Below the pieces are notes generated by a model. It did no database searches and was not told where the DNA came from. It was given only the letters and a program-made list of their open reading frames with translations. A DNA stretch of 64,000 nucleotides, from positions 184,575 to 248,574 of IMG/VR virus record IMGVR_UViG_3300009011_000001; one strand, 5' to 3'. This document shows, piece after piece, positions 394-62,654 of the stretch; the stretch's first letter is position 1, and each line of letters starts with the position of its first letter. Made by a program: the position numbers and the translations under genes.

Positions 394-822
394 ATGGATA
401 ACAAGGCTGAAGCAAAAAGGCTGATTGAACTTGCACTAAAAGACCCACGGCTTGGACGACCAGCTCTGACGGCAGATATCAACCAACTGGAATGGATCTA
501 CCTCGAAGGCAAACCAGTCGGCTTCTTCACCCCTAAGCTTGAACCAGATGGACGATACAGAACCGGCACCATCTTTATTGAACCATCTCACCGTGGTAAA
601 GGATTAGCTACAGATGTAGTAAAGAAGTATTTTGACGACGGTGATAAACCGGGCCGTGCTTGGATTGAACCCAGTAATCTGGCTAGCCAAACTATCTTCA
701 AACGAGCAGGCTTTTATAAGTCTGGTCGCGTCACTAACTCGAAAGCAACATCACGAATGTTTGAAGAATGGGTGAACAAACCTATCCCTCCTCTTGTGAG
801 TCGACCAGTGTTAGGTTGGTGA
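394..822 (+). CDS. GNAT-family acetyltransferase
   Basis: Motif A IFIEPSHRGKGLA and later SNLASQTIFKRAGF; SD GAGGAG before ATG 394. Confidence 0.85.
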   Translation: MDNKAEAKRLIELALKDPRLGRPALTADINQLEWIYLEGKPVGFFTPKLEPDGRYRTGTIFIEPSHRGKGLATDVVKKYFDDGDKPGRAWIEPSNLASQTIFKRAGFYKSGRVTNSKATSRMFEEWVNKPIPPLVSRPVLGW

Positions 823-844
823 TAAGTTACATTATATGTGTAGA

Positions 845-1070
845 CAGATCACGCCCATCCATCCTGCTCCTGGATGGGCTACTTGTGGTCAGGACATTCC
901 CCCTGACCGATGGTCATTGCCATTCCTGGTCGTGTGGCAGTGACTGCTAAGTATCACTTAGCCTACAGGGCAATCGTCGTGGGAGTGGATTGCTCTGTAG
1001 GGTGTGTGGTGTGTGGCGATGGTGGTGAGCGGAAAGCATAGGGCGGAGCGCAAGCTCCGCCTTTATGCCG
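845..1070 (+). ncRNA. Candidate structured ncRNA 1 (five hairpins, kissing loop, GU tail, terminator)
   Basis: Stems 853-861/871-879, 887-893/902-908, 912-922/935-945, 946-952/956-962, 963-975/988-1000; G-U wobbles favour the + strand; no credible ORF. Confidence 0.65.
1036..1070 (+). terminator. Hairpin-TATGC terminator-like element
   Basis: gcatagggcggagc-gcaa-gctccgcctttatgc. Confidence 0.7.
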
Positions 1071-1091
1071 TTATAGTTCGATTTAAAAAAC

Positions 1092-1108
1092 TCTCAGTAA
1101 TACATACT
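1092..1108 (+). promoter_or_regulatory. Putative early (virion RNAP) promoter
   Basis: CAGTAATACAT variant of the CAGTCACACAT motif at 19031 and 62605. Confidence 0.5.
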
Positions 1109-1130
1109 GGAACTGACTACACACCACCCT

Positions 1131-1144
1131 GTCCTTTGGAGGAC
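1131..1144 (+). promoter_or_regulatory. SD-sequestering hairpin GTCCT-TTGG-AGGAC
   Basis: One of 7 copies; ATG at 1151. Confidence 0.75.
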
Positions 1145-1150
1145 TTAGTA

Positions 1151-1489
1151 ATGCAAAAAGCAGATCTCTTGCTCGTCGTGGTTTATGTTGGCTTTATTCT
1201 CTATCGCCAGCATCGTCAGTTCAGCACCCTGCTGTCGCAATCGGTGGGCGGTTGGGCAGGACTCAAGTTCGCCGCTTCAATGCTTTCGGCGTTGTTCTAC
1301 ACGAGCATGGCTAACAACTCGCACTACAGGAACGGGTTCTTAGCATCGTTTATCACCACGCCGATTGTGCTCTACTCCATCGGGTTCCATTACACCCTTG
1401 GGGCTAACCTCTTTTTCGCTGCTGAGTCGACGGCGTTTTTCGTAGCCGGCTGGCATCTTGTCCGCAAACACCAGATGAACACTTTCTGA
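1151..1489 (+). CDS. Small multi-pass membrane protein
   Basis: GGAGG SD, start MQKADL, about 4 hydrophobic segments. Confidence 0.75.
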   Translation: MQKADLLLVVVYVGFILYRQHRQFSTLLSQSVGGWAGLKFAASMLSALFYTSMANNSHYRNGFLASFITTPIVLYSIGFHYTLGANLFFAAESTAFFVAGWHLVRKHQMNTF

Positions 1490-1499
1490 GGATTTCACT

Positions 1500-1862
1500 A
1501 TGTTAGTTTTCGTTCGTAATCCGTGGGTCCAAGGCATTGCCACCGCATCGGGCATTGCCGCAACGTTGGCTGTGGCTAGCTACTTCATTCTGAAGAGCGA
1601 GAAGAAAATTGCATCTGAGCCATCGCCGGTTTCTGAAGCAGACCGCAAGCAACGCGCTGAACTCGAGGGGAACATCAAACATCTCCTCCACCTCATGTCT
1701 AAGCAACGTGAGAAGCGTCCGATGTTCCTCACCAGTGAGCAGGCTCTCAGGGTCCGCTACCTGACCAACAAGATTTCGTATAGCTACGTCAACATACCGA
1801 TGCTGGAAGAAATCCAGATCGAAATCAAAAACATTTACGACAGTGCTGAAAAACGCACTTAA
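1500..1862 (+). CDS. Hypothetical protein, N-terminal membrane anchor plus helical domain
   Basis: GAGG SD, hydrophobic N-terminus, operon spacing. Confidence 0.75.
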   Translation: MLVFVRNPWVQGIATASGIAATLAVASYFILKSEKKIASEPSPVSEADRKQRAELEGNIKHLLHLMSKQREKRPMFLTSEQALRVRYLTNKISYSYVNIPMLEEIQIEIKNIYDSAEKRT

Positions 1863-1872
1863 AGGAATTGCC

Positions 1873-2205
1873 ATGTCAGTAGAAGCTGCTATCCGCATTG
1901 CGTGTGGTACTGTCTGCGTTGCCGCAGGTCTGTACGGTACTTACAAGTTCTGCAAGTTCTTCAACAGCGTTTCACGCAAACTCCAGATTGTTCAACGGAT
2001 CCAGACCAACGTTGAACAGCTGCACGTCGGCGACGCTGCTCTTGAAGGAGACCAGCTTCGTCAATTCATGATGGAGTTGGAATCGGTAAAGGATGTCCTG
2101 GAGCAGATCCAATTGGACTTCAGTTCCATTACCGAGAACGATCTTCTCAATGCCCTGAACACGTCCACCAAAATGTTCGTAACCTACGGTATCGCTAAGG
2201 AGTGA
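1873..2205 (+). CDS. Hypothetical protein, N-terminal membrane anchor plus helical domain
   Basis: AAGGA SD before MSVEAA; architecture like the upstream gene. Confidence 0.75.
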   Translation: MSVEAAIRIACGTVCVAAGLYGTYKFCKFFNSVSRKLQIVQRIQTNVEQLHVGDAALEGDQLRQFMMELESVKDVLEQIQLDFSSITENDLLNALNTSTKMFVTYGIAKE

Positions 2206-2609
2206 GCATGAGCAGTGTTAATGCAAGCGATCTTGAACAGCTGGCTATCATCGAAGCATTGATTGATAGCCAGGCTTCCCGTAACCAACCCAGCGGTGGA
2301 AACATCACCGCTGCTCGCTTTACTTGGGCCGGCGTCTTCGTAAATCCCTCGAAGAAAGAGTACGCGTTCAAGATCTACACGAAACCTGAAGACGATCCAC
2401 GTCCTGGGTGGTTGTACACGATCAACGAACACCGTCTCTCTGACGGCAAGGTCTTATCGACCGAAGTATCTGTAGGTGGTCTGTTGCCCTTGGTTAAGGA
2501 CAACGAGGTCATCGACATGATAAAAGCATTCAACGTAGACAGAAAAGGGTCGGTGTTGGTATCCGACCTTTGGGATCTGGAAACCGGTAAACACTACCCG
2601 ATGGTTTAG
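2202..2609 (+). CDS. Hypothetical protein
   Basis: Overlaps upstream stop, AAGGAG SD, followed by a hairpin. Confidence 0.75.
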   Translation: MSMSSVNASDLEQLAIIEALIDSQASRNQPSGGNITAARFTWAGVFVNPSKKEYAFKIYTKPEDDPRPGWLYTINEHRLSDGKVLSTEVSVGGLLPLVKDNEVIDMIKAFNVDRKGSVLVSDLWDLETGKHYPMV

Positions 2610-2622
2610 CAGCCATTGGTAA

Positions 2623-2662
2623 CTGCTGTGGGGAAACCCACAGCGGCACTCCTTTTTATTTT
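2623..2662 (+). terminator. Intrinsic terminator
   Basis: ctgctgtggg-gaaa-cccacagcgg followed by a T-rich tract. Confidence 0.65.
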
Positions 2663-2705
2663 CTACAAATACACCCTTTCTTATAAGTTCCTGGAGCGCA
2701 CTTAA

Positions 2706-3470
2706 ATGAAGTACCTTCACCCGGAAGATGCGGAAAGAATCGAGATCCTGAAAAACAAAAGCGATCGGGAGCTGGTTCCTGCAGAGTTGTTGATTAAACG
2801 TGTGATCAATTTCGACCACACTTACGAATACAGTGATGACATCAATGTCTATCACACCTGGTCTGCCAAAGAAAAAGAACTGCGCCAAGACCTGCTGGAA
2901 AGTGACTTGATCAATGCGGAGGTGAAAGCCCTCGCACTCAAGGCACTCAAGAATACAGTCAGTCACGAACCACTGCAGCAGTTGGTCGACCGGTATCCGA
3001 ACATCAAGTACGAGCACTACGGTCCAACTGGCTTCACCAAACTTCTCGAAGAAAAAGGTGATGAATACACCGAGCGCGCAATTGAGACGCTACGAGAACT
3101 TGGAAGTCTGATTGATGAATTACCTCCGGCATTATATCCGGGTTGGTTCATCATGACTCCGGCGACGCCGCACCAGAAGATCATGCGCGACTACGCAAGA
3201 AGTGACACCGGCCGCGATTCGTGGTACGGGTACGCATTACCGAAACCGCTCCACGATCGCATCTGGAACTTCTTCGACAAATGCATGTTCCAGAAAGAAG
3301 GTTGGAAAACCATTGTTGAAACCTACGAGTTGGCGAGAGCCAAATCTGCAGGCGTAAACTATGGTCTCCAGTACAACGTATCTGATGACGCACCGGCTAA
3401 ATACACCGGTACTCCAGCAGCTTGGTTGTACGTCCATGGGCCTGGTAAAGTCTACAGGTTCTACGTCTAA
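2706..3470 (+). CDS. Hypothetical protein
   Basis: 254-aa ORF, GGAG SD, terminator after stop. Confidence 0.8.
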   Translation: MKYLHPEDAERIEILKNKSDRELVPAELLIKRVINFDHTYEYSDDINVYHTWSAKEKELRQDLLESDLINAEVKALALKALKNTVSHEPLQQLVDRYPNIKYEHYGPTGFTKLLEEKGDEYTERAIETLRELGSLIDELPPALYPGWFIMTPATPHQKIMRDYARSDTGRDSWYGYALPKPLHDRIWNFFDKCMFQKEGWKTIVETYELARAKSAGVNYGLQYNVSDDAPAKYTGTPAAWLYVHGPGKVYRFYV

Positions 3471-3474
3471 GCAC

Positions 3475-3517
3475 AGGCCCACGGTTCGCCGTGGGTTTGC
3501 TTACCTTCTTTTTTTTT
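3475..3517 (+). terminator. Intrinsic terminator
   Basis: ggcccacgg-ttcg-ccgtgggtt followed by poly-T. Confidence 0.75.
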
Positions 3518-3544
3518 GTTTGTAGTGGCAAAATAATACTACTA

Positions 3545-3819
3545 TGTAACACGAGCTCTTTCACAAAACTTAAAGCGAGTCATTATAGTAAGTCGTTTAC
3601 GGACGACAGCTCCCTGCTGACAAGCAAACTTACAGACGGAAGTCTGACCTGGGGTTTTGTTCATCGAACATTGCCTGCCTTGTAGATGGCGCGATAGGCG
3701 AAGTAAAGCGCTCAAAGGACTCTTTGTTTTTTATCGGCTTTGAAAACGATGAGCGACATCTATTCGGCTTAACAAAAGAAATGACATAGAGGCAGGGCGC
3801 ACGCCCTGCCTCTATGCTG
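3545..3819 (+). ncRNA. Candidate structured ncRNA 2 (nested multibranch fold)
   Basis: Nested long-range helices 3579-3584/3780-3785, 3655-3661/3771-3777, 3683-3688/3757-3762, 3709-3714/3750-3755; GNRA hairpin cagac-ggaa-gtctg; TATG at 3543; hairpin-TATGC end. Confidence 0.6.
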
Positions 3820-3859
3820 TGTGTATGCATGCACTCCAAATCAAAACAGGTAATAAGAA

Positions 3860-4489
3860 ATGAAACTTTGGGACTGGCTAACAGGCAGAAACACAGCGGC
3901 AGTAATTCCGGCAAGTTCTAAGGTGGAAGAAGTTCCAACCGAGAACTATGTACCTAACCCCATCCGTCTGGTCGTGGTGAGTCTTCCTCCAGACATGTCG
4001 CCTGATCTTGCCAATGCTTTTACGGCAATGGCGGAACAGAGCGTCAGTAAAATCGGCGGCTTCGGCGGCGTATCGTGGGCTGATCCAAAAGGCGTTAAGA
4101 AGGGCGACGTACCGCTCAAGTACAAACGCACTCACCAGCCTTACATCGTCATCCGTGAGATCAAAGGGAAGGTCTACGAGACCACCTTGAACGTCGTGAT
4201 CGATCAGTTCCTGAACAACCGTACTCTGAACGACATTGGCCAATCTGGTATCAATGTGTTTGCCTATGAGTACGATGAAAGCAGTAACGACATCATCGAC
4301 GCGTGGTGGCTGCCATCTGTCTTCTACGGTCGTTCCGAAGTGGACGGTCGTCAGGATGCTCGGTTGATCTACCTCGATATCTTCGGTGAGGTTCGTGAAG
4401 GCGAGGAGTACAAACGCATTGCCCAAGAGGTCCATGCACACCGGCTTATCAAGTCGGATCTTGCCTTGGCCCTTACCGCTACTTTGTAA
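3860..4489 (+). CDS. Hypothetical protein, paralog of 5437..6123; possible diverged tail-tube-like fold
   Basis: YVPNPIRLVVV...AYEYDESSNDIIDAWW shared with the 5437 product. Confidence 0.8.
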   Translation: MKLWDWLTGRNTAAVIPASSKVEEVPTENYVPNPIRLVVVSLPPDMSPDLANAFTAMAEQSVSKIGGFGGVSWADPKGVKKGDVPLKYKRTHQPYIVIREIKGKVYETTLNVVIDQFLNNRTLNDIGQSGINVFAYEYDESSNDIIDAWWLPSVFYGRSEVDGRQDARLIYLDIFGEVREGEEYKRIAQEVHAHRLIKSDLALALTATL

Positions 4490-4513
4490 CATCTTACTTC
4501 TCGTACCTATAAT
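4484..4513 (+). promoter_or_regulatory. Possible sigma70-like promoter for ncRNA 3
   Basis: TTGTAA (4484-4489), 18-nt spacer, TATAAT (4508-4513). Confidence 0.35.
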
Positions 4514-4519
4514 TTGAAA

Positions 4520-4745
4520 AGAAACTTCTCTCCAGGGCAAATGAAGAGAGTCTTCGACCACCTGATCCTGGAAGGTCGAATCGGGCGATGGGTGTGGTCA
4601 ATGCTCGGCGGTGCATTGACTTCACAAAGGACAGTTAGGCGTGTAGAGCTTAGCCGTCAGCCACCTACGGGCATAGGTGGTTGGTGGATGGGCGTTGCAC
4701 TCCTGGGGCGGTACTGGCGCCCGACGGGGCGCCTTTTATGCCGCA
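4520..4745 (+). ncRNA. Candidate structured ncRNA 3
   Basis: Closing helix 4530-4540/4695-4708; hairpins 4553-4559/4574-4580, 4597-4604/4613-4620, 4658-4667/4674-4683; hairpin-TATGC end. Confidence 0.55.
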
Positions 4746-4802
4746 ATAGTATGAAGATCCCATGTTGAGATCTTTGTTCTACCAATCGCCGAGGATATAT
4801 CC

Positions 4803-5436: not shown

Positions 5437-6123
5437 ATGTCTATCAATCAAGAAAAAGCTCGCCCTTACGTTCCTGGTGTTATCGTTGTAAAGATCGTCA
5501 AGGTGCCGGAAATCCTGACAAAAAACGAAGTGCTACACAAAGCTTTCGTCAACCTTTTCGAAAACCAGTCCAGAAACATCGGTAGTTTCAATACTGCTAG
5601 TTATCTGCAACCAGTCGAATTGATGGCGGCGCTGCCAAAGCTCGTTACTGAAGATGGTCAGGAGACCGGGCTGGATATCGAAATCCCCGAATTGAAAAAC
5701 AAAGCGACCAGTCGCTTGCTCAGGGCAATCACCAAACTTTGCTTCGTTGGCCGCACGCCAACCGAAGTGAAACAGGATGGTTTCGATCTCCTCGCATACG
5801 AACTGTCAGAAGATCAAACCACCGTTATCGACGCCTGGAAGTTCACAGGGTTTACCTTCCCGAACGCGCTGCCCCACAGCAGCGATTACGACTCCAACAT
5901 GGCTTTCAACCCTGATGCTCCGGCAAGCATCAAGGTGCCGGTGATTGACAAGGATCTCGATTACAGCACCCTCAACCTGATCGGCAACATGCACAACAAC
6001 GACAATGTCCTGTTCGAAGCCATGAAGCAATTCGTGTTCGAACTCAAAAAGTACGGTAAAGACACCTCTGTCGTCGAAAACGACTTGGCGAACCTTCAGG
6101 GCGCTGGCAAGAAAGATGCGTGA
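5437..6123 (+). CDS. Hypothetical protein, paralog of 3860..4489
   Basis: YVPGVIVVKIV...AYELSEDQTTVIDAWKF; GGAG SD. Confidence 0.8.
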   Translation: MSINQEKARPYVPGVIVVKIVKVPEILTKNEVLHKAFVNLFENQSRNIGSFNTASYLQPVELMAALPKLVTEDGQETGLDIEIPELKNKATSRLLRAITKLCFVGRTPTEVKQDGFDLLAYELSEDQTTVIDAWKFTGFTFPNALPHSSDYDSNMAFNPDAPASIKVPVIDKDLDYSTLNLIGNMHNNDNVLFEAMKQFVFELKKYGKDTSVVENDLANLQGAGKKDA

Positions 6124-17178: not shown

Positions 17179-17215
17179 GAAGTATCTCCTGGGTGAGCCA
17201 CTTACCGACATAGGT

Positions 17216-17257
17216 GTGCAGATGAGGATGAGGCAAAAACCCCATCCTCATCTGCAC
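17216..17257. terminator. 15-bp stem hairpin (terminator or processing site)
   Basis: gtgcagatgaggatg...catcctcatctgcac. Confidence 0.55.
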
Positions 17258-17274
17258 GGGGTATCGCTGCAGCC

Positions 17275-17820: not shown

Positions 17821-17921
17821 GGAAGTAGCTCCGAGGGTGGCGTAAGGAAACAGTTAAACGTGACACATAGAATTGAAGGTTAAAACATACAGGGAGTGGC
17901 AATGCCACTCCCTGTATGCTA

Positions 17922-19020: not shown

Positions 19021-19041
19021 AACTTTCTTTCAGTCACACAT
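19021..19041 (+). promoter_or_regulatory. Putative early promoter, 21-bp exact repeat of 62595-62615
   Basis: AACTTTCTTTCAGTCACACAT heads a + strand operon of small genes. Confidence 0.65.
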
Positions 19042-19063: not shown

Positions 19064-19077
19064 GTCCTTAGGAGGAC
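19064..19077 (+). promoter_or_regulatory. SD-sequestering hairpin GTCCT-TAGG-AGGAC
   Basis: Directly before ATG 19081. Confidence 0.75.
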
Positions 19078-19829: not shown

Positions 19830-19843
19830 GTCCTTAGGAGGAC
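19830..19843 (+). promoter_or_regulatory. SD-sequestering hairpin GTCCT-TAGG-AGGAC
   Basis: Before ATG 19850. Confidence 0.75.
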
Positions 19844-20244: not shown

Positions 20245-20258
20245 GTCCTTTGGAGGAC
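20245..20258 (+). promoter_or_regulatory. SD-sequestering hairpin GTCCT-TTGG-AGGAC
   Basis: Before ATG 20261. Confidence 0.75.
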
Positions 20259-21812: not shown

Positions 21813-21826
21813 GTCCTTTGGAGGAC
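21813..21826 (+). promoter_or_regulatory. SD-sequestering hairpin GTCCT-TTGG-AGGAC
   Basis: Before ATG 21832. Confidence 0.75.
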
Positions 21827-22775: not shown

Positions 22776-22789
22776 GTCCTTAGGAGGAC
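22776..22789 (+). promoter_or_regulatory. SD-sequestering hairpin GTCCT-TAGG-AGGAC
   Basis: Before ATG 22793. Confidence 0.75.
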
Positions 22790-29684: not shown

Positions 29685-29707
29685 GGTTGGGTTGTAACAC
29701 TGCTTAA

Positions 29708-29750
29708 CATAGAGCCGGGCCTTGTGCCCGGCTCTATGCTGTTTATGTCC
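29708..29750 (+). terminator. Hairpin-TATGC terminator
   Basis: catagagccgggc-cttgt-gcccggctctatgctg. Confidence 0.75.
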
Positions 29751-29879
29751 ATTTTCTAGTCTAAGCTTTTTTACTGATACATTATCTAATAGTACAGACT
29801 TTCTCTTTGTAGAGCGGAAAGCATTGTCGGAGGGGTGAAGATATTCCCCAGAGTAAAATTAAACTAGAGAGCATTACCT

Positions 29880-62595: not shown

Positions 62596-62615
62596 ACTTT
62601 CTTTCAGTCACACAT
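62595..62615 (+). promoter_or_regulatory. Putative early promoter, 21-bp exact repeat of 19021-19041
   Basis: AACTTTCTTTCAGTCACACAT. Confidence 0.65.
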
Positions 62616-62640: not shown

Positions 62641-62654
62641 GTCCTCCGGAGGAC
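62641..62654 (+). promoter_or_regulatory. SD-sequestering hairpin GTCCT-CCGG-AGGAC
   Basis: Before ATG 62660. Confidence 0.75.

What the first reader, a model, noticed from the sequence alone, without database searches (positions are those of the whole stretch)
845..4745. Possible RNA-based translation-control system: ncRNA cluster with anti-SD-like loops plus SD-locked phage mRNAs
Seen: three similar-sized structured elements within 4 kb expose pyrimidine loops (UCCUGCUCC, CAUUCCC, UUCCUGG, UCCCU, AUCCUGG) that are complementary to GGA/GGAG/AGGA. In the same genome the SDs of many non-structural genes are hidden in a conserved hairpin. Established: C-rich loops of S. aureus RNAIII and RsaE pair with SD sequences, and GGA loops are the CsrA/RsmA ligands in RsmY/RsmZ. 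Inference: the phage RNAs could silence exposed host SDs or neutralise Rsm sRNAs while phage hairpin-SDs are protected, or they could unlock those hairpins. This is speculative but is my best candidate for an undescribed system in the window.
Basis: inference. Interest (0 to 1): 0.75.

Follow-up and report, generated by a model that had tools for sequence, protein, structure and literature searches.

The report
New structured RNA genes in jumbo phage
Three gaps in an uncultivated phiKZ-like giant phage hold real, conserved non-coding RNA genes, one founding a new five-hairpin family, but a named "anti-ribosome-binding-site" loop is used to fold the RNA itself, and the proposed translation-control role is unproven.

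Summary
The window is the last 64 kb of a 248.6-kb IMG/VR contig from an uncultivated phiKZ-like jumbo phage. The three gaps (823-1150, 3471-3859, 4490-4802) are its largest and most structured intergenic regions.

Each gap holds a + strand unit made of a promoter-like start, a structured RNA of about 230-280 nt, and a phiKZ-type terminator (GC hairpin followed by TTATGCCGT). These RNAs are more conserved than the neighbouring genes. They match no Rfam family and no named phage.

RNA A has orthologues in nine related contigs, representing five lineages. Five hairpins are supported by covariation.

It forms a 7-bp loop-loop helix with the purine loop of hairpin 5; all cells are paired and 5 of 7 pairs show compensatory changes. 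Only CUCC in loop 1 is invariant and has no partner.

The SD hairpin GUCCU-NNNN-AGGAC is real, occurring at 7 genes, but it is weak (-5.8 kcal/mol).

The pyrimidine loops pair with phage start regions no better than shuffled loops do. A purine-rich linker in RNA C is an 11-nt complement of the 5' half of the SD hairpin (p about 0.01-0.07).

Verdict: these are real, new ncRNA genes. Translation control remains possible but is not shown.

The parts
830..838 (+). Promoter-like start of RNA A: CATTATATG, with TATG at 835-838 and the putative start at G838
   Evidence: TATG with the start at G is the phiKZ late (nvRNAP) promoter core (PMC4666361). ATTATATG precedes the orthologues in L010, L002, L012, L009 and L003.
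838..1072 (+). ncRNA A, founder of the five-hairpin family. H1 is 853-879 (loop 862-870), H2 887-908 (loop 894-901), H3 912-945, H4 946-962, H5 963-1000 (loop 976-987). A G/U-rich tail spans 1001-1035.
   Evidence: Fold z is -6.3. Model R1 scores 93-177 bits in the 9 source loci (the model was built from these same sequences) and 176 bits in L076, which was not used to build it. 88% of cells are paired against 71% in shuffles, and 30 of 46 pairs change on both sides.
895..901 (+). H2 loop CAUUCCC, the 5' strand of the loop-loop helix
   Evidence: It pairs with 981-987. On alignment A7, columns 51-57 pair with 144-150: 100% of 54 cells are paired, 5 of 7 pairs are compensatory, and slid controls give 38-73%. 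It was the only conserved antiparallel run found among the unpaired columns.
981..987 (+). H5 loop GGGAGUG, the 3' strand of the loop-loop helix
862..870 (+). H1 loop UCCUGCUCC, carrying the family-invariant CUCC
   Evidence: CTCC is invariant in alignment A5. Pairing it with the H5 loop shows no covariation (80% paired, 500/500 shuffles as good).
1036..1072 (+). Terminator of RNA A: GC hairpin followed by TTTATGCCGTT
   Evidence: It matches the phiKZ terminator motif that ends YTTATKYYGT (PMC10914365). TTTATGCYG occurs 6 times in the window against 0.59 expected.
3543..3820 (+). ncRNA B. TATG lies at 3543-3546, the body follows, and the 14-bp terminator hairpin is 3785-3816. GCUCCCUG at 3609-3616 lies in a linker. 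CAAAGGAC is at 3713-3720.
   Evidence: Fold z is -4.9 to -5.3. It is 80-90% identical to L010 and carries indels of 1 and 3 nt, which argues against coding. R1 gave no match to B at E up to 10.
4508..4745 (+). ncRNA C. TATAAT is at 4508-4513, the body runs from about 4520 to 4715, and the terminator is 4716-4744.
   Evidence: The body is 95% identical to L010, against 78% for both flanking genes. Six of the 11 substitutions keep pairs in the long hairpin (GC to AU, CG to UG, GU to GC), and only 1 of the 11 falls on a third codon position of the 84-aa ORF. R1 gives a weak hit of 17.5 bits; the motif CUUAGCC followed by a hairpin is shared with A.
4625..4635 (+). Linker CAAAGGACAGU of RNA C, complementary to the 5' arm and loop of the hairpin-SD
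   Evidence: Mean unpaired probability is 0.65. There is an 11-nt perfect match to the start region of gene 21832 and a 10-nt match to that of gene 1151; duplex energies are -19.0 and -18.6 kcal/mol. CAAAGGAC occurs on the + strand only twice in 64 kb, once in B and once in C.
1131..1144 (+). SD hairpin GUCCU-UUGG-AGGAC before gene 1151-1489
19064..19077 (+). SD hairpin before gene 19081
19830..19843 (+). SD hairpin before gene 19850
20245..20258 (+). SD hairpin before gene 20261
21813..21826 (+). SD hairpin before gene 21832
22776..22789 (+). SD hairpin before gene 22793
62641..62654 (+). SD hairpin variant GUCCUCCGGAGGAC before gene 62660

Best explanation
The three gaps are three separate + strand genes for non-coding RNAs of a phiKZ-like jumbo phage. 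Each is bounded by a phage promoter-like start (TATG for A and B, TATAAT for C) and by the phiKZ-type intrinsic terminator.

RNA A belongs to a previously undescribed family of about 230 nt with five consecutive hairpins. The pyrimidine loop of hairpin 2 and the purine loop of hairpin 5 form a 7-bp loop-loop helix that closes the molecule into a compact fold. These steps are shown by comparative sequence analysis.

The following is inferred. The RNAs act in trans after transcription. The compact fold displays a few single-stranded segments that pair with translation start regions of phage mRNAs. These segments are the invariant CUCC of loop 1, which would pair with GGAG, and in RNA C the linker CAAAGGACAGU, which would pair with the 5' half of the SD hairpin. 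Such pairing would shift the translation of the hairpin-SD gene class. Whether the effect is opening or masking cannot be told, because the predicted duplex also touches GGA.
For: Real genes on the + strand:
- Fold z-scores are -5 to -6.
- The + strand MFE is 12-22 kcal/mol lower than the - strand MFE for A, B and C, and the consensus helices hold many G-U pairs.
- The terminator matches the published phiKZ motif, and TATG starts match the phiKZ late promoter core.
- Nucleotide identity to L010 is 89% for the A core and 95% for C, against 53-79% for coding neighbours.
- Indels and codon-position patterns argue against coding.

Fold:
- 88% of cells are paired against 71% in shuffles, 30 of 46 pairs change on both sides, and slid controls give 32-48%.
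- The loop-loop helix is 100% paired with 5 of 7 pairs compensatory. It was the only such run found in an unbiased scan of unpaired columns.

Acting in trans rather than as a gene-specific leader:
- Near-identical A RNAs precede four unrelated gene families.

Link to start regions:
- CUCC is invariant in loop 1 and has no covarying partner.
- The C linker is complementary to the hairpin-SD start regions (4/300 shuffles as good), has an unpaired probability of 0.65, and gives duplexes of -16.0 to -19.0 kcal/mol with three of the seven hairpin-SD start regions (-13.6 with a fourth), against -5.8 for the hairpin itself.
- The hairpin-SD class is conserved in relatives L048 and L081.
Against: - No expression data exist, because the phage is uncultivated.
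- The pyrimidine loops are no better matched to the start regions than shuffled loops.
- The C-linker match is borderline when all start regions are counted (21/300). It was found after looking for it, and it cannot be checked by covariation, because C is known only from two near-identical copies.
- L010's single known hairpin-SD has one mismatch to the linker.
- Conservation and covariation run along the whole molecule. That pattern is more typical of protein-bound or architectural RNAs than of seed-driven sRNAs.
- A 5-bp hairpin of -5.8 kcal/mol hardly needs an unlocking factor.
- A-type RNAs occur in relatives without the motif in the DNA held.
Confidence: 0.33

Rival explanations
1. The fold itself is the function. 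The RNAs would be scaffolds or decoys bound by a protein or a machine, such as the ribosome, a phage or host RNA-binding protein, a host defence sensor or a nuclease. Loop 1 CUCC and the closed five-hairpin shape would be the recognition surface, and no mRNA pairing would be involved.
For: - Covariation runs along all five helices and the tertiary loop-loop helix.
- The whole body is conserved more than the neighbouring genes; C is 95% identical.
- Several paralogous or unrelated structured RNAs occur per genome, for example three units in L003 9212-10000.
- C/U-rich loops recur in other units. L003 has UCCCUCCCCACUCCU, the L009 terminator loop has CUCGCUCC, and the RNA upstream of the virion gene in the L002 group (L002 9709-9945, here called L2c) has UUCCU.
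Against: - No RNA-binding protein gene is recognisable nearby; Pfam, PHROGs and Atlas searches gave nothing.
- No partner can be named.
- GGA motifs for CsrA/RsmA are not conserved.
Confidence: 0.3
2. The RNAs are cis-acting leaders. Each structured RNA would be the 5' part of the downstream operon's transcript and would control read-through of its own terminator. This could work as attenuation or as put-like modification of the phage RNA polymerase.
For: - Each unit has the order promoter, structure, terminator, then a same-strand gene 43-88 nt further on.
- In phage 201phi2-1, 8 of 11 sRNAs arise by premature termination in 5' UTRs, and the authors proposed antitermination (PMC11512511).
Against: - Near-identical A RNAs precede four unrelated genes, and in L003 another ncRNA.
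- Separate promoter-like motifs lie between terminator and gene.
- No alternative anti-terminator pairing was found, and tail-to-UTR complementarity is not consistent across lineages.
Confidence: 0.15
3. The RNAs form RNA-only assemblies. The complementary H2 and H5 loops would pair between molecules, as in the phi29 pRNA ring or the ROOL/GOLLD cages, giving dimers or rings with a structural or assembly role late in infection.
For: - The two loops covary as a pair.
- The start is of the late-promoter type.
- The units lie next to a virion protein gene.
Against: - Sequence alone cannot tell cis from trans pairing.
- The hairpins are joined by linkers of 0-3 nt, which is compatible with an intramolecular closure.
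- There is no Rfam match to pRNA, ROOL or GOLLD.
- phiKZ-like phages have no known packaging RNA (own knowledge).
Confidence: 0.1
4. The original form of the idea: free anti-SD loops silence host SDs or titrate the GGA loops of RsmY/RsmZ, while phage SDs are protected in hairpins.
For: - UCC is enriched in the loops of RNA A.
- CUCC in loop 1 is invariant.
- The hairpin-SD class exists.
Against: - The H2 loop is occupied.
- B and C add no UCC hairpin loops.
- Only 7 of about 75 phage genes have the hairpin; most use an open UGGAG, so they would be hit as well.
- The host is unknown, so neither host SDs nor Rsm RNAs could be examined.
Confidence: 0.07

Closest known systems
sRNAs of jumbo phages 201phi2-1 and phiKZ mapped by ONT-cappable-seq (PMC11512511, PMC10914365)
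   Same: They are short transcription units in phiKZ-like phages in which a terminator closely follows a promoter. The terminator motif is the same (hairpin followed by TTAT), and the TATG late promoter core is the same.
   Different: - Those RNAs are under 250 nt, and most are 5'-UTR fragments.
- The one conserved example lies upstream of the gp182 tail gene. In phiKZ gp182 is a 664-aa protein with a 55-nt upstream gap, which is a different position.
- R1 finds nothing in 30 kb of phiKZ, and there is no DNA similarity to any named phage.
- The text read describes no tertiary loop-loop pairing there.
S. aureus RNAIII and RsaE (C-rich loops that pair with SD sequences)
   Same: They are multi-hairpin RNAs with pyrimidine-rich loops, and a CUCC/UCCC motif is complementary to GGAG.
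   Different: - There is no homology (no Rfam hit).
- Here at least one C-rich loop is consumed by an internal loop-loop helix.
- The host and phage are presumably Gram-negative-type.
- Complementarity to start regions is not above chance.
phi29 pRNA
   Same: It is a phage-encoded structured RNA in which two loops are complementary and covary among relatives while the rest of the sequence drifts.
   Different: - There is no sequence or Rfam match.
- The architecture differs: five tandem hairpins rather than a three-way junction.
- The phage type is unrelated.
- Intermolecular pairing is not shown here.
Anti-antisense activators (DsrA/RprA on rpoS) and hairpin operators at start sites (MS2 replicase operator)
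   Same: A start region is folded into a hairpin. A trans factor that binds one arm would change ribosome access. The C linker is complementary to the 5' arm, as DsrA is to the rpoS leader.
   Different: - The hairpin here has only 5 bp and places GG of the SD in the loop.
- The predicted duplex also reaches GGA, so the sign of the effect is unknown.
- No Hfq-type features were examined.
- Nothing has been tested experimentally.

Membership tests
phiKZ-type transcription unit | Intrinsic terminator motif: GC hairpin followed by YTTATKYYGT | tested here: met
   A has hairpin 1041-1061 followed by TTTATGCCGTT. C has hairpin 4716-4733 followed by TTTTATGCCGC. B has the variant CTCTATGCTGT.
phiKZ-type transcription unit | Late promoter core TATG, with the start at G | tested here: inconclusive
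   TATG lies at 835-838 (A) and 3543-3546 (B) and is conserved in the orthologues. C has TATAAT instead. This rests on the motif only; there are no transcript data.
Base-pairing sRNA with C-rich anti-SD loops (RsaE/RNAIII type) | C-rich motifs are unpaired and conserved | tested here: inconclusive
   CUCC in loop 1 is invariant and unpartnered. The H2 loop is paired with the H5 loop. B and C have no UCC in MFE hairpin loops.
Base-pairing sRNA with C-rich anti-SD loops (RsaE/RNAIII type) | Complementarity to target start regions beyond chance | tested here: not met
   For five of the six segments tested, mean duplex energies against the 74 phage start regions lie within about 1.4 sd of shuffled versions. 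The sixth is C 4694-4707, a paired stretch rather than a loop, which is about 2.5 sd better. Host start regions are not available.
Base-pairing sRNA with C-rich anti-SD loops (RsaE/RNAIII type) | Homology to the known families | tested here: not met
   There is no Rfam match at gathering score, and none up to E = 5 apart from two chance miRNA hits.
CsrB/RsmY/RsmZ-type protein sponge | Several GGA motifs in hairpin loops of the transcribed strand | tested here: not met
   The RNA strand is +. Its loops carry UCC. GGA is present in the H5 loop of only 3 of 5 lineages.
Riboswitch or gene-specific leader | The conserved RNA is tied to one downstream gene family | tested here: not met
   The downstream proteins fall into four unrelated families, and in L003 the next unit is another ncRNA.
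phi29 pRNA-like oligomerising RNA | Covarying complementary loops that pair between molecules | not testable with these tools
   Covariation of the two loops is shown. Sequence cannot decide between cis and trans pairing.
Conserved gp182-upstream sRNA of phiKZ and 201phi2-1 | Lies in the 5' UTR of the gp182 tail-protein homologue | tested here: not met
   C lies upstream of a 174-aa DUF7941 virion protein. phiKZ gp182 is 664 aa with a 55-nt upstream gap.

The most novel reading that the evidence does not exclude
Nucleus-forming jumbo phages of this clade may run an RNA-on-RNA translational switch. In this reading, late, compactly folded ncRNAs made by the phage RNA polymerase leave the phage nucleus. 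They then pair with the 5' half of a conserved SD hairpin (RNA C linker) or with GGAG (loop 1 CUCC of the A family). This would time or re-rank the translation of a whole class of small phage genes in the cytoplasm. It would be a layer of control that compensates for transcription being walled off from the ribosomes.
Probability: 0.12. Interest if true: 0.8.

Novelty: new member of a known kind. Interest (0 to 1): 0.5.

Why it matters
Small RNAs of phiKZ-like phages have only recently been mapped, and none has a known function or a tested structure.

This case offers three things:
- A phage RNA family whose fold, including a tertiary loop-loop helix, is supported by compensatory changes across five lineages.
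- RNAs that are better conserved than the proteins around them.
- A conserved SD hairpin that marks a gene class in the same phages.

Together these give two concrete objects for bench work: the five-hairpin RNA, and the pair formed by the RNA C linker and the hairpin-SD. They could be used to study post-transcriptional control or RNA-based host manipulation in nucleus-forming phages. If the RNAs turn out to be protein decoys or RNA-only assemblies, that would also be new for this phage group.

Tried and rejected
- Known RNA families and tRNAs: no Rfam hit and no tRNA or tmRNA.
- DNA similarity to named phages: none for the window region or for the L002-type RNA. The nearest named phage shares only 33% of the major capsid protein.
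- Minus-strand reading, which would give GGA loops and an RsmY/Z-like RNA: rejected by G-U pair content, the MFE asymmetry between strands and the terminator orientation.
- Coding small ORFs (768-950, 3491-3685, 4514-4768): rejected by indels of 1 and 3 nt in B, and by only 1 of 11 substitutions falling on third codon positions in C.
- H1 loop pairing with the H5 loop: no covariation. H1 with H3 is weak and inconsistent.
- Pairing of the A tail with the downstream 5' UTR: better than shuffles only in the window, and only for the longest perfect match (16/500); the duplex energy is not better there, and the other lineages show nothing.
- B's 8-mer CAAAGGAC against the hairpin-SD: not significant on its own (161/300).
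- R1 hits in L062 and L065: false positives inside unstructured sequence that reads as coding.
- Scans of IMG/VR with the hairpin-SD 15-mer and the C-linker 15-mer: almost only chance single hits outside the phage's own contig. The exception was L048, a close relative.
- A scan of genome contigs for the virion protein found nothing.
- Protein clues for an RNA partner: none from Pfam, PHROGs or Atlas.

Full report
**Where the window comes from.** The window is the last 64 kb of IMGVR_UViG_3300009011_000001, a 248,574-bp contig; window base 1 corresponds to contig base 184,575. It encodes a phiKZ-type major head protein, an RNA polymerase subunit and virion proteins. The nearest named phage, pPa_SNUABM_DT01, shares only 33% of the capsid protein. 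No DNA in the phage collection resembles bases 800-4800. This is therefore an uncultivated, deep-branching phiKZ-like jumbo phage. The names of its relatives' records look like soil or rhizosphere metagenomes, which is my own reading. The tools genome search and the fetch from genomes were shut, so the rest of the genome could only be reached piecemeal.

**Checking the observation.** A codon-usage-based gene call gives 75 genes, tightly packed. The gaps 823-1150, 3471-3859 and 4490-4802 are the largest. They are also the most structured of the larger gaps, with z = -6.4, -5.3 and -5.3 on the + strand. Two gaps of about 100 nt (17179-17274 and 17821-17921) reach z of -4.8 to -6.1 but hold only terminator-like hairpins, and the remaining gaps are weaker on the + strand or unstructured.

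Objectively, UCC is over-represented in the MFE hairpin loops of the three RNAs: 3 observed against 0.40 expected, matched by 1 of 250 shuffles. All three occurrences are in RNA A, and the pyrimidine content of the loops is not raised overall. UCCCU in B lies in a linker. AUCCUGG in C lies in a loop only in some folds, and the adjacent loop carries its complement, CCAGGG.

**The gaps are genes for RNAs on the + strand.**
- Each stretch ends in a GC hairpin followed by TTTATGCCGT or a close variant. This is the conserved intrinsic terminator motif reported for 61 phiKZ terminators, which ends YTTATKYYGT (PMC10914365). TTTATGCYG occurs 6 times in the window against 0.59 expected.
- A and B begin with TATG, at 835-838 and 3543-3546. 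TATG is the phiKZ late promoter core, with the start at G (PMC4666361). C begins after a TATAAT at 4508-4513, behind a T-rich stretch.
- The + strand folds 12-22 kcal/mol better than the - strand, and the consensus helices contain many G-U pairs.
- Against the closest relative, L010, the A core is 89% identical and the C body 95%. B is 80% by one alignment and 90% by another. The flanking coding genes are 53-79% identical.
- B differs from its orthologue by indels of 1 and 3 nt. In C only 1 of 11 substitutions falls on a third codon position of the 84-aa ORF, while six of the 11 preserve base pairs in the long hairpin.
- There is no Rfam family and no tRNA.

**RNA A founds a family.** Searches with neighbouring proteins brought in related contigs. 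Orthologues of A lie after a GNAT acetyltransferase gene in L010, L002, L011 and L012. In L003 the orthologue heads a 790-nt array of three RNA units. They fall into five sequence lineages that share little beyond their architecture.

A covariance model, R1, was built from them. It scores them at 93-177 bits, which is expected because the model was built from these sequences. It also finds L076, a contig not used to build it, at 176 bits. It finds nothing credible in 0.5 Mb of unrelated viral loci or in 30 kb of phiKZ.

On the model-based alignment, 88% of cells are paired against 71% in shuffles (0 of 500 shuffles as high). Thirty of 46 pairs change on both sides, and slid controls give 32-48%. 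In hairpin 5, all 10 pairs show compensatory changes.

**The key structural result.** The other lineages carry different but equally matched pairs: CGCUCUC with GAGAGCG, UGCUCUC with GAGGGCA, UGUCCUC with GAGGACA, and UGUCCUC with GGGGAUG.

On alignment columns that the model did not fit to this pairing, all 54 cells form standard pairs. Five of 7 pairs change on both sides, and slid controls give 38-73%. An unbiased scan of all unpaired columns returns this helix and nothing else. Loop-shuffle tests give 0.4-12% per lineage.

So this pyrimidine loop builds the fold, or an RNA-RNA contact between copies. It is not a free anti-SD.

By contrast, CUCC in loop 1 is invariant (GCUCC in four lineages, ACUCC in the fifth). 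Pairing it with the hairpin-5 loop shows no covariation.

**C and B.** R1 hits C weakly: 17.5 bits, rough E of 0.015, and 13.4 bits in L010. The aligned parts include the shared CUUAGCC followed by a long hairpin. C may therefore be a distant paralogue of A. B shows no relation.

The RNA that occupies C's position in the L002 group differs in architecture. It shares UUGCACUCC before the terminator and has a conserved G-U-rich hairpin with a UUCCU loop.

**The SD hairpin.** GUCCU-NNNN-AGGAC lies 2-6 nt before the ATG of seven genes: 1151, 19081, 19850, 20261, 21832, 22793 and 62660. Six of the sites match a 14-mer for which 0.04 matches are expected. It puts GG of the SD in a tetraloop and AGGAC in a 5-bp stem, at -5.8 kcal/mol.

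It recurs, with variable loops, in relatives L048/L080 (six genes) and L081 (two genes), and in L010. It is absent from the 15-20 kb held for the L002, L003, L009 and L012 lineages, which do carry A-type RNAs. Most other genes use an open UGGAG.

**Is there a link between the RNAs and the start regions?** The loops of A and C and two other pyrimidine-rich segments (the B linker and C 4694-4707) pair with the 74 start regions about as well as shuffled versions do. Five of the six lie within about 1.4 sd of the shuffles; C 4694-4707 is about 2.5 sd better.

One element stands out. The linker CAAAGGACAGU of C, at 4625-4635, has an unpaired probability of 0.65. It is an 11-nt perfect complement of ACUGUCCUUUG in the start region of gene 21832, and a 10-nt complement in that of gene 1151. 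It therefore covers the 5' arm and loop of the hairpin.
- Only 4 of 300 shuffles do as well against the seven hairpin-SD regions, and 21 of 300 against all regions.
- Predicted duplexes are -19.0 (21832), -18.6 (1151), -16.0 (20261) and -13.6 (19850) kcal/mol.
- CAAAGGAC occurs on the + strand only twice in 64 kb, once in B and once in C.

This is a lead, not a demonstration. It was found after looking for it, it cannot be tested by covariation, and the duplex also touches GGA, so the direction of any effect is open.

**What the RNAs are not.**
- They are not gene-specific leaders. Near-identical A RNAs precede four unrelated protein families.
- They are not the conserved gp182-upstream sRNA of phiKZ and 201phi2-1.
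- They are not CsrA sponges, given the strand and the lack of conserved GGA.
- No neighbouring protein gives a hint of RNA binding.

**Verdict.** What is solid is a set of new, conserved, structured ncRNA genes, one of which defines a five-hairpin family closed by a covarying loop-loop helix, together with a conserved SD hairpin on a gene class.

My working explanation is that these are trans-acting RNAs which present CUCC and, in C, the purine linker to start regions; I give it 0.33. The rivals and their weights are:
- A protein- or machine-bound scaffold or decoy: 0.30.
- A cis-acting read-through leader: 0.15.
- An oligomerising RNA: 0.10.

The find is a new member of the known kind "phage-encoded small structured RNAs". 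It is of moderate interest, limited by the lack of a cultured phage and of any expression data.

Noticed in passing
window 19028-19041, 62602-62615, and variant at 1092-1105: A promoter-like motif, TTTCAGTCACACAT (preceded by CTTTC), lies 26-36 nt upstream of the SD hairpins of genes 1151, 19081 and 62660. The same motif follows the A-type RNA in L009 and L012. It may define the promoter class of the hairpin-SD genes.
   Followed up: partly
L003 9212-10000: A 790-nt non-coding array of three promoter-to-terminator units lies upstream of the virion protein gene. The first unit is an A-family member. The third has a 15-nt terminator loop, UCCCUCCCCACUCCU.
   Followed up: partly
window 3860-4489 and 5437-6123: The two proteins that flank RNA C and the virion protein gene are distant paralogues (28% identity over 103 aa, E 6e-9). 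Pfam, PHROGs and Atlas give no function.
   Followed up: partly
window 394-822; L002 3599-4030: A small GNAT acetyltransferase gene (Pfam PF00583, 30.6 bits) lies directly upstream of RNA A. Its 3' end is co-conserved with the RNA in L010, L002, L011 and L012, and L003 lacks it there. Whether the two are functionally linked is unknown.
   Followed up: no
L002 9709-9945 (also L011, L015, L016, L012): The RNA at C's position in the L002 lineage has a different fold, with a conserved G-U-rich hairpin and a UUCCU loop. It shares UUGCACUCC before the terminator with C. It also contains AAAGUCCUAAG, which is the sense copy of the 5' half of the SD hairpin.
   Followed up: partly
window 17179-17274 and 17821-17921; 29685-29879 (- strand): These short intergenic regions have very strong structure (z -4.8 to -6.1). 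They are probably bidirectional or minus-strand terminators between structural genes.
   Followed up: no
L048 (= L080) and L081: Two further relatives were found: IMGVR_UViG_3300023118_000038, and 3300034691_000040 (capsid protein 87% identical). They carry the hairpin-SD on clusters of small genes upstream of the capsid gene. The arms are invariant and the loops vary (UUAG, UAAG, UAG, UUCG, UUUG).
   Followed up: partly
window 1001-1035 and 1115-1125: The G/U-rich tail of RNA A contains a 9-nt complement of ACACACCAC, which lies just 5' of the SD hairpin of gene 1151. L010 shows a similar match with a bulge. The other lineages do not, so it was not pursued.
   Followed up: yes
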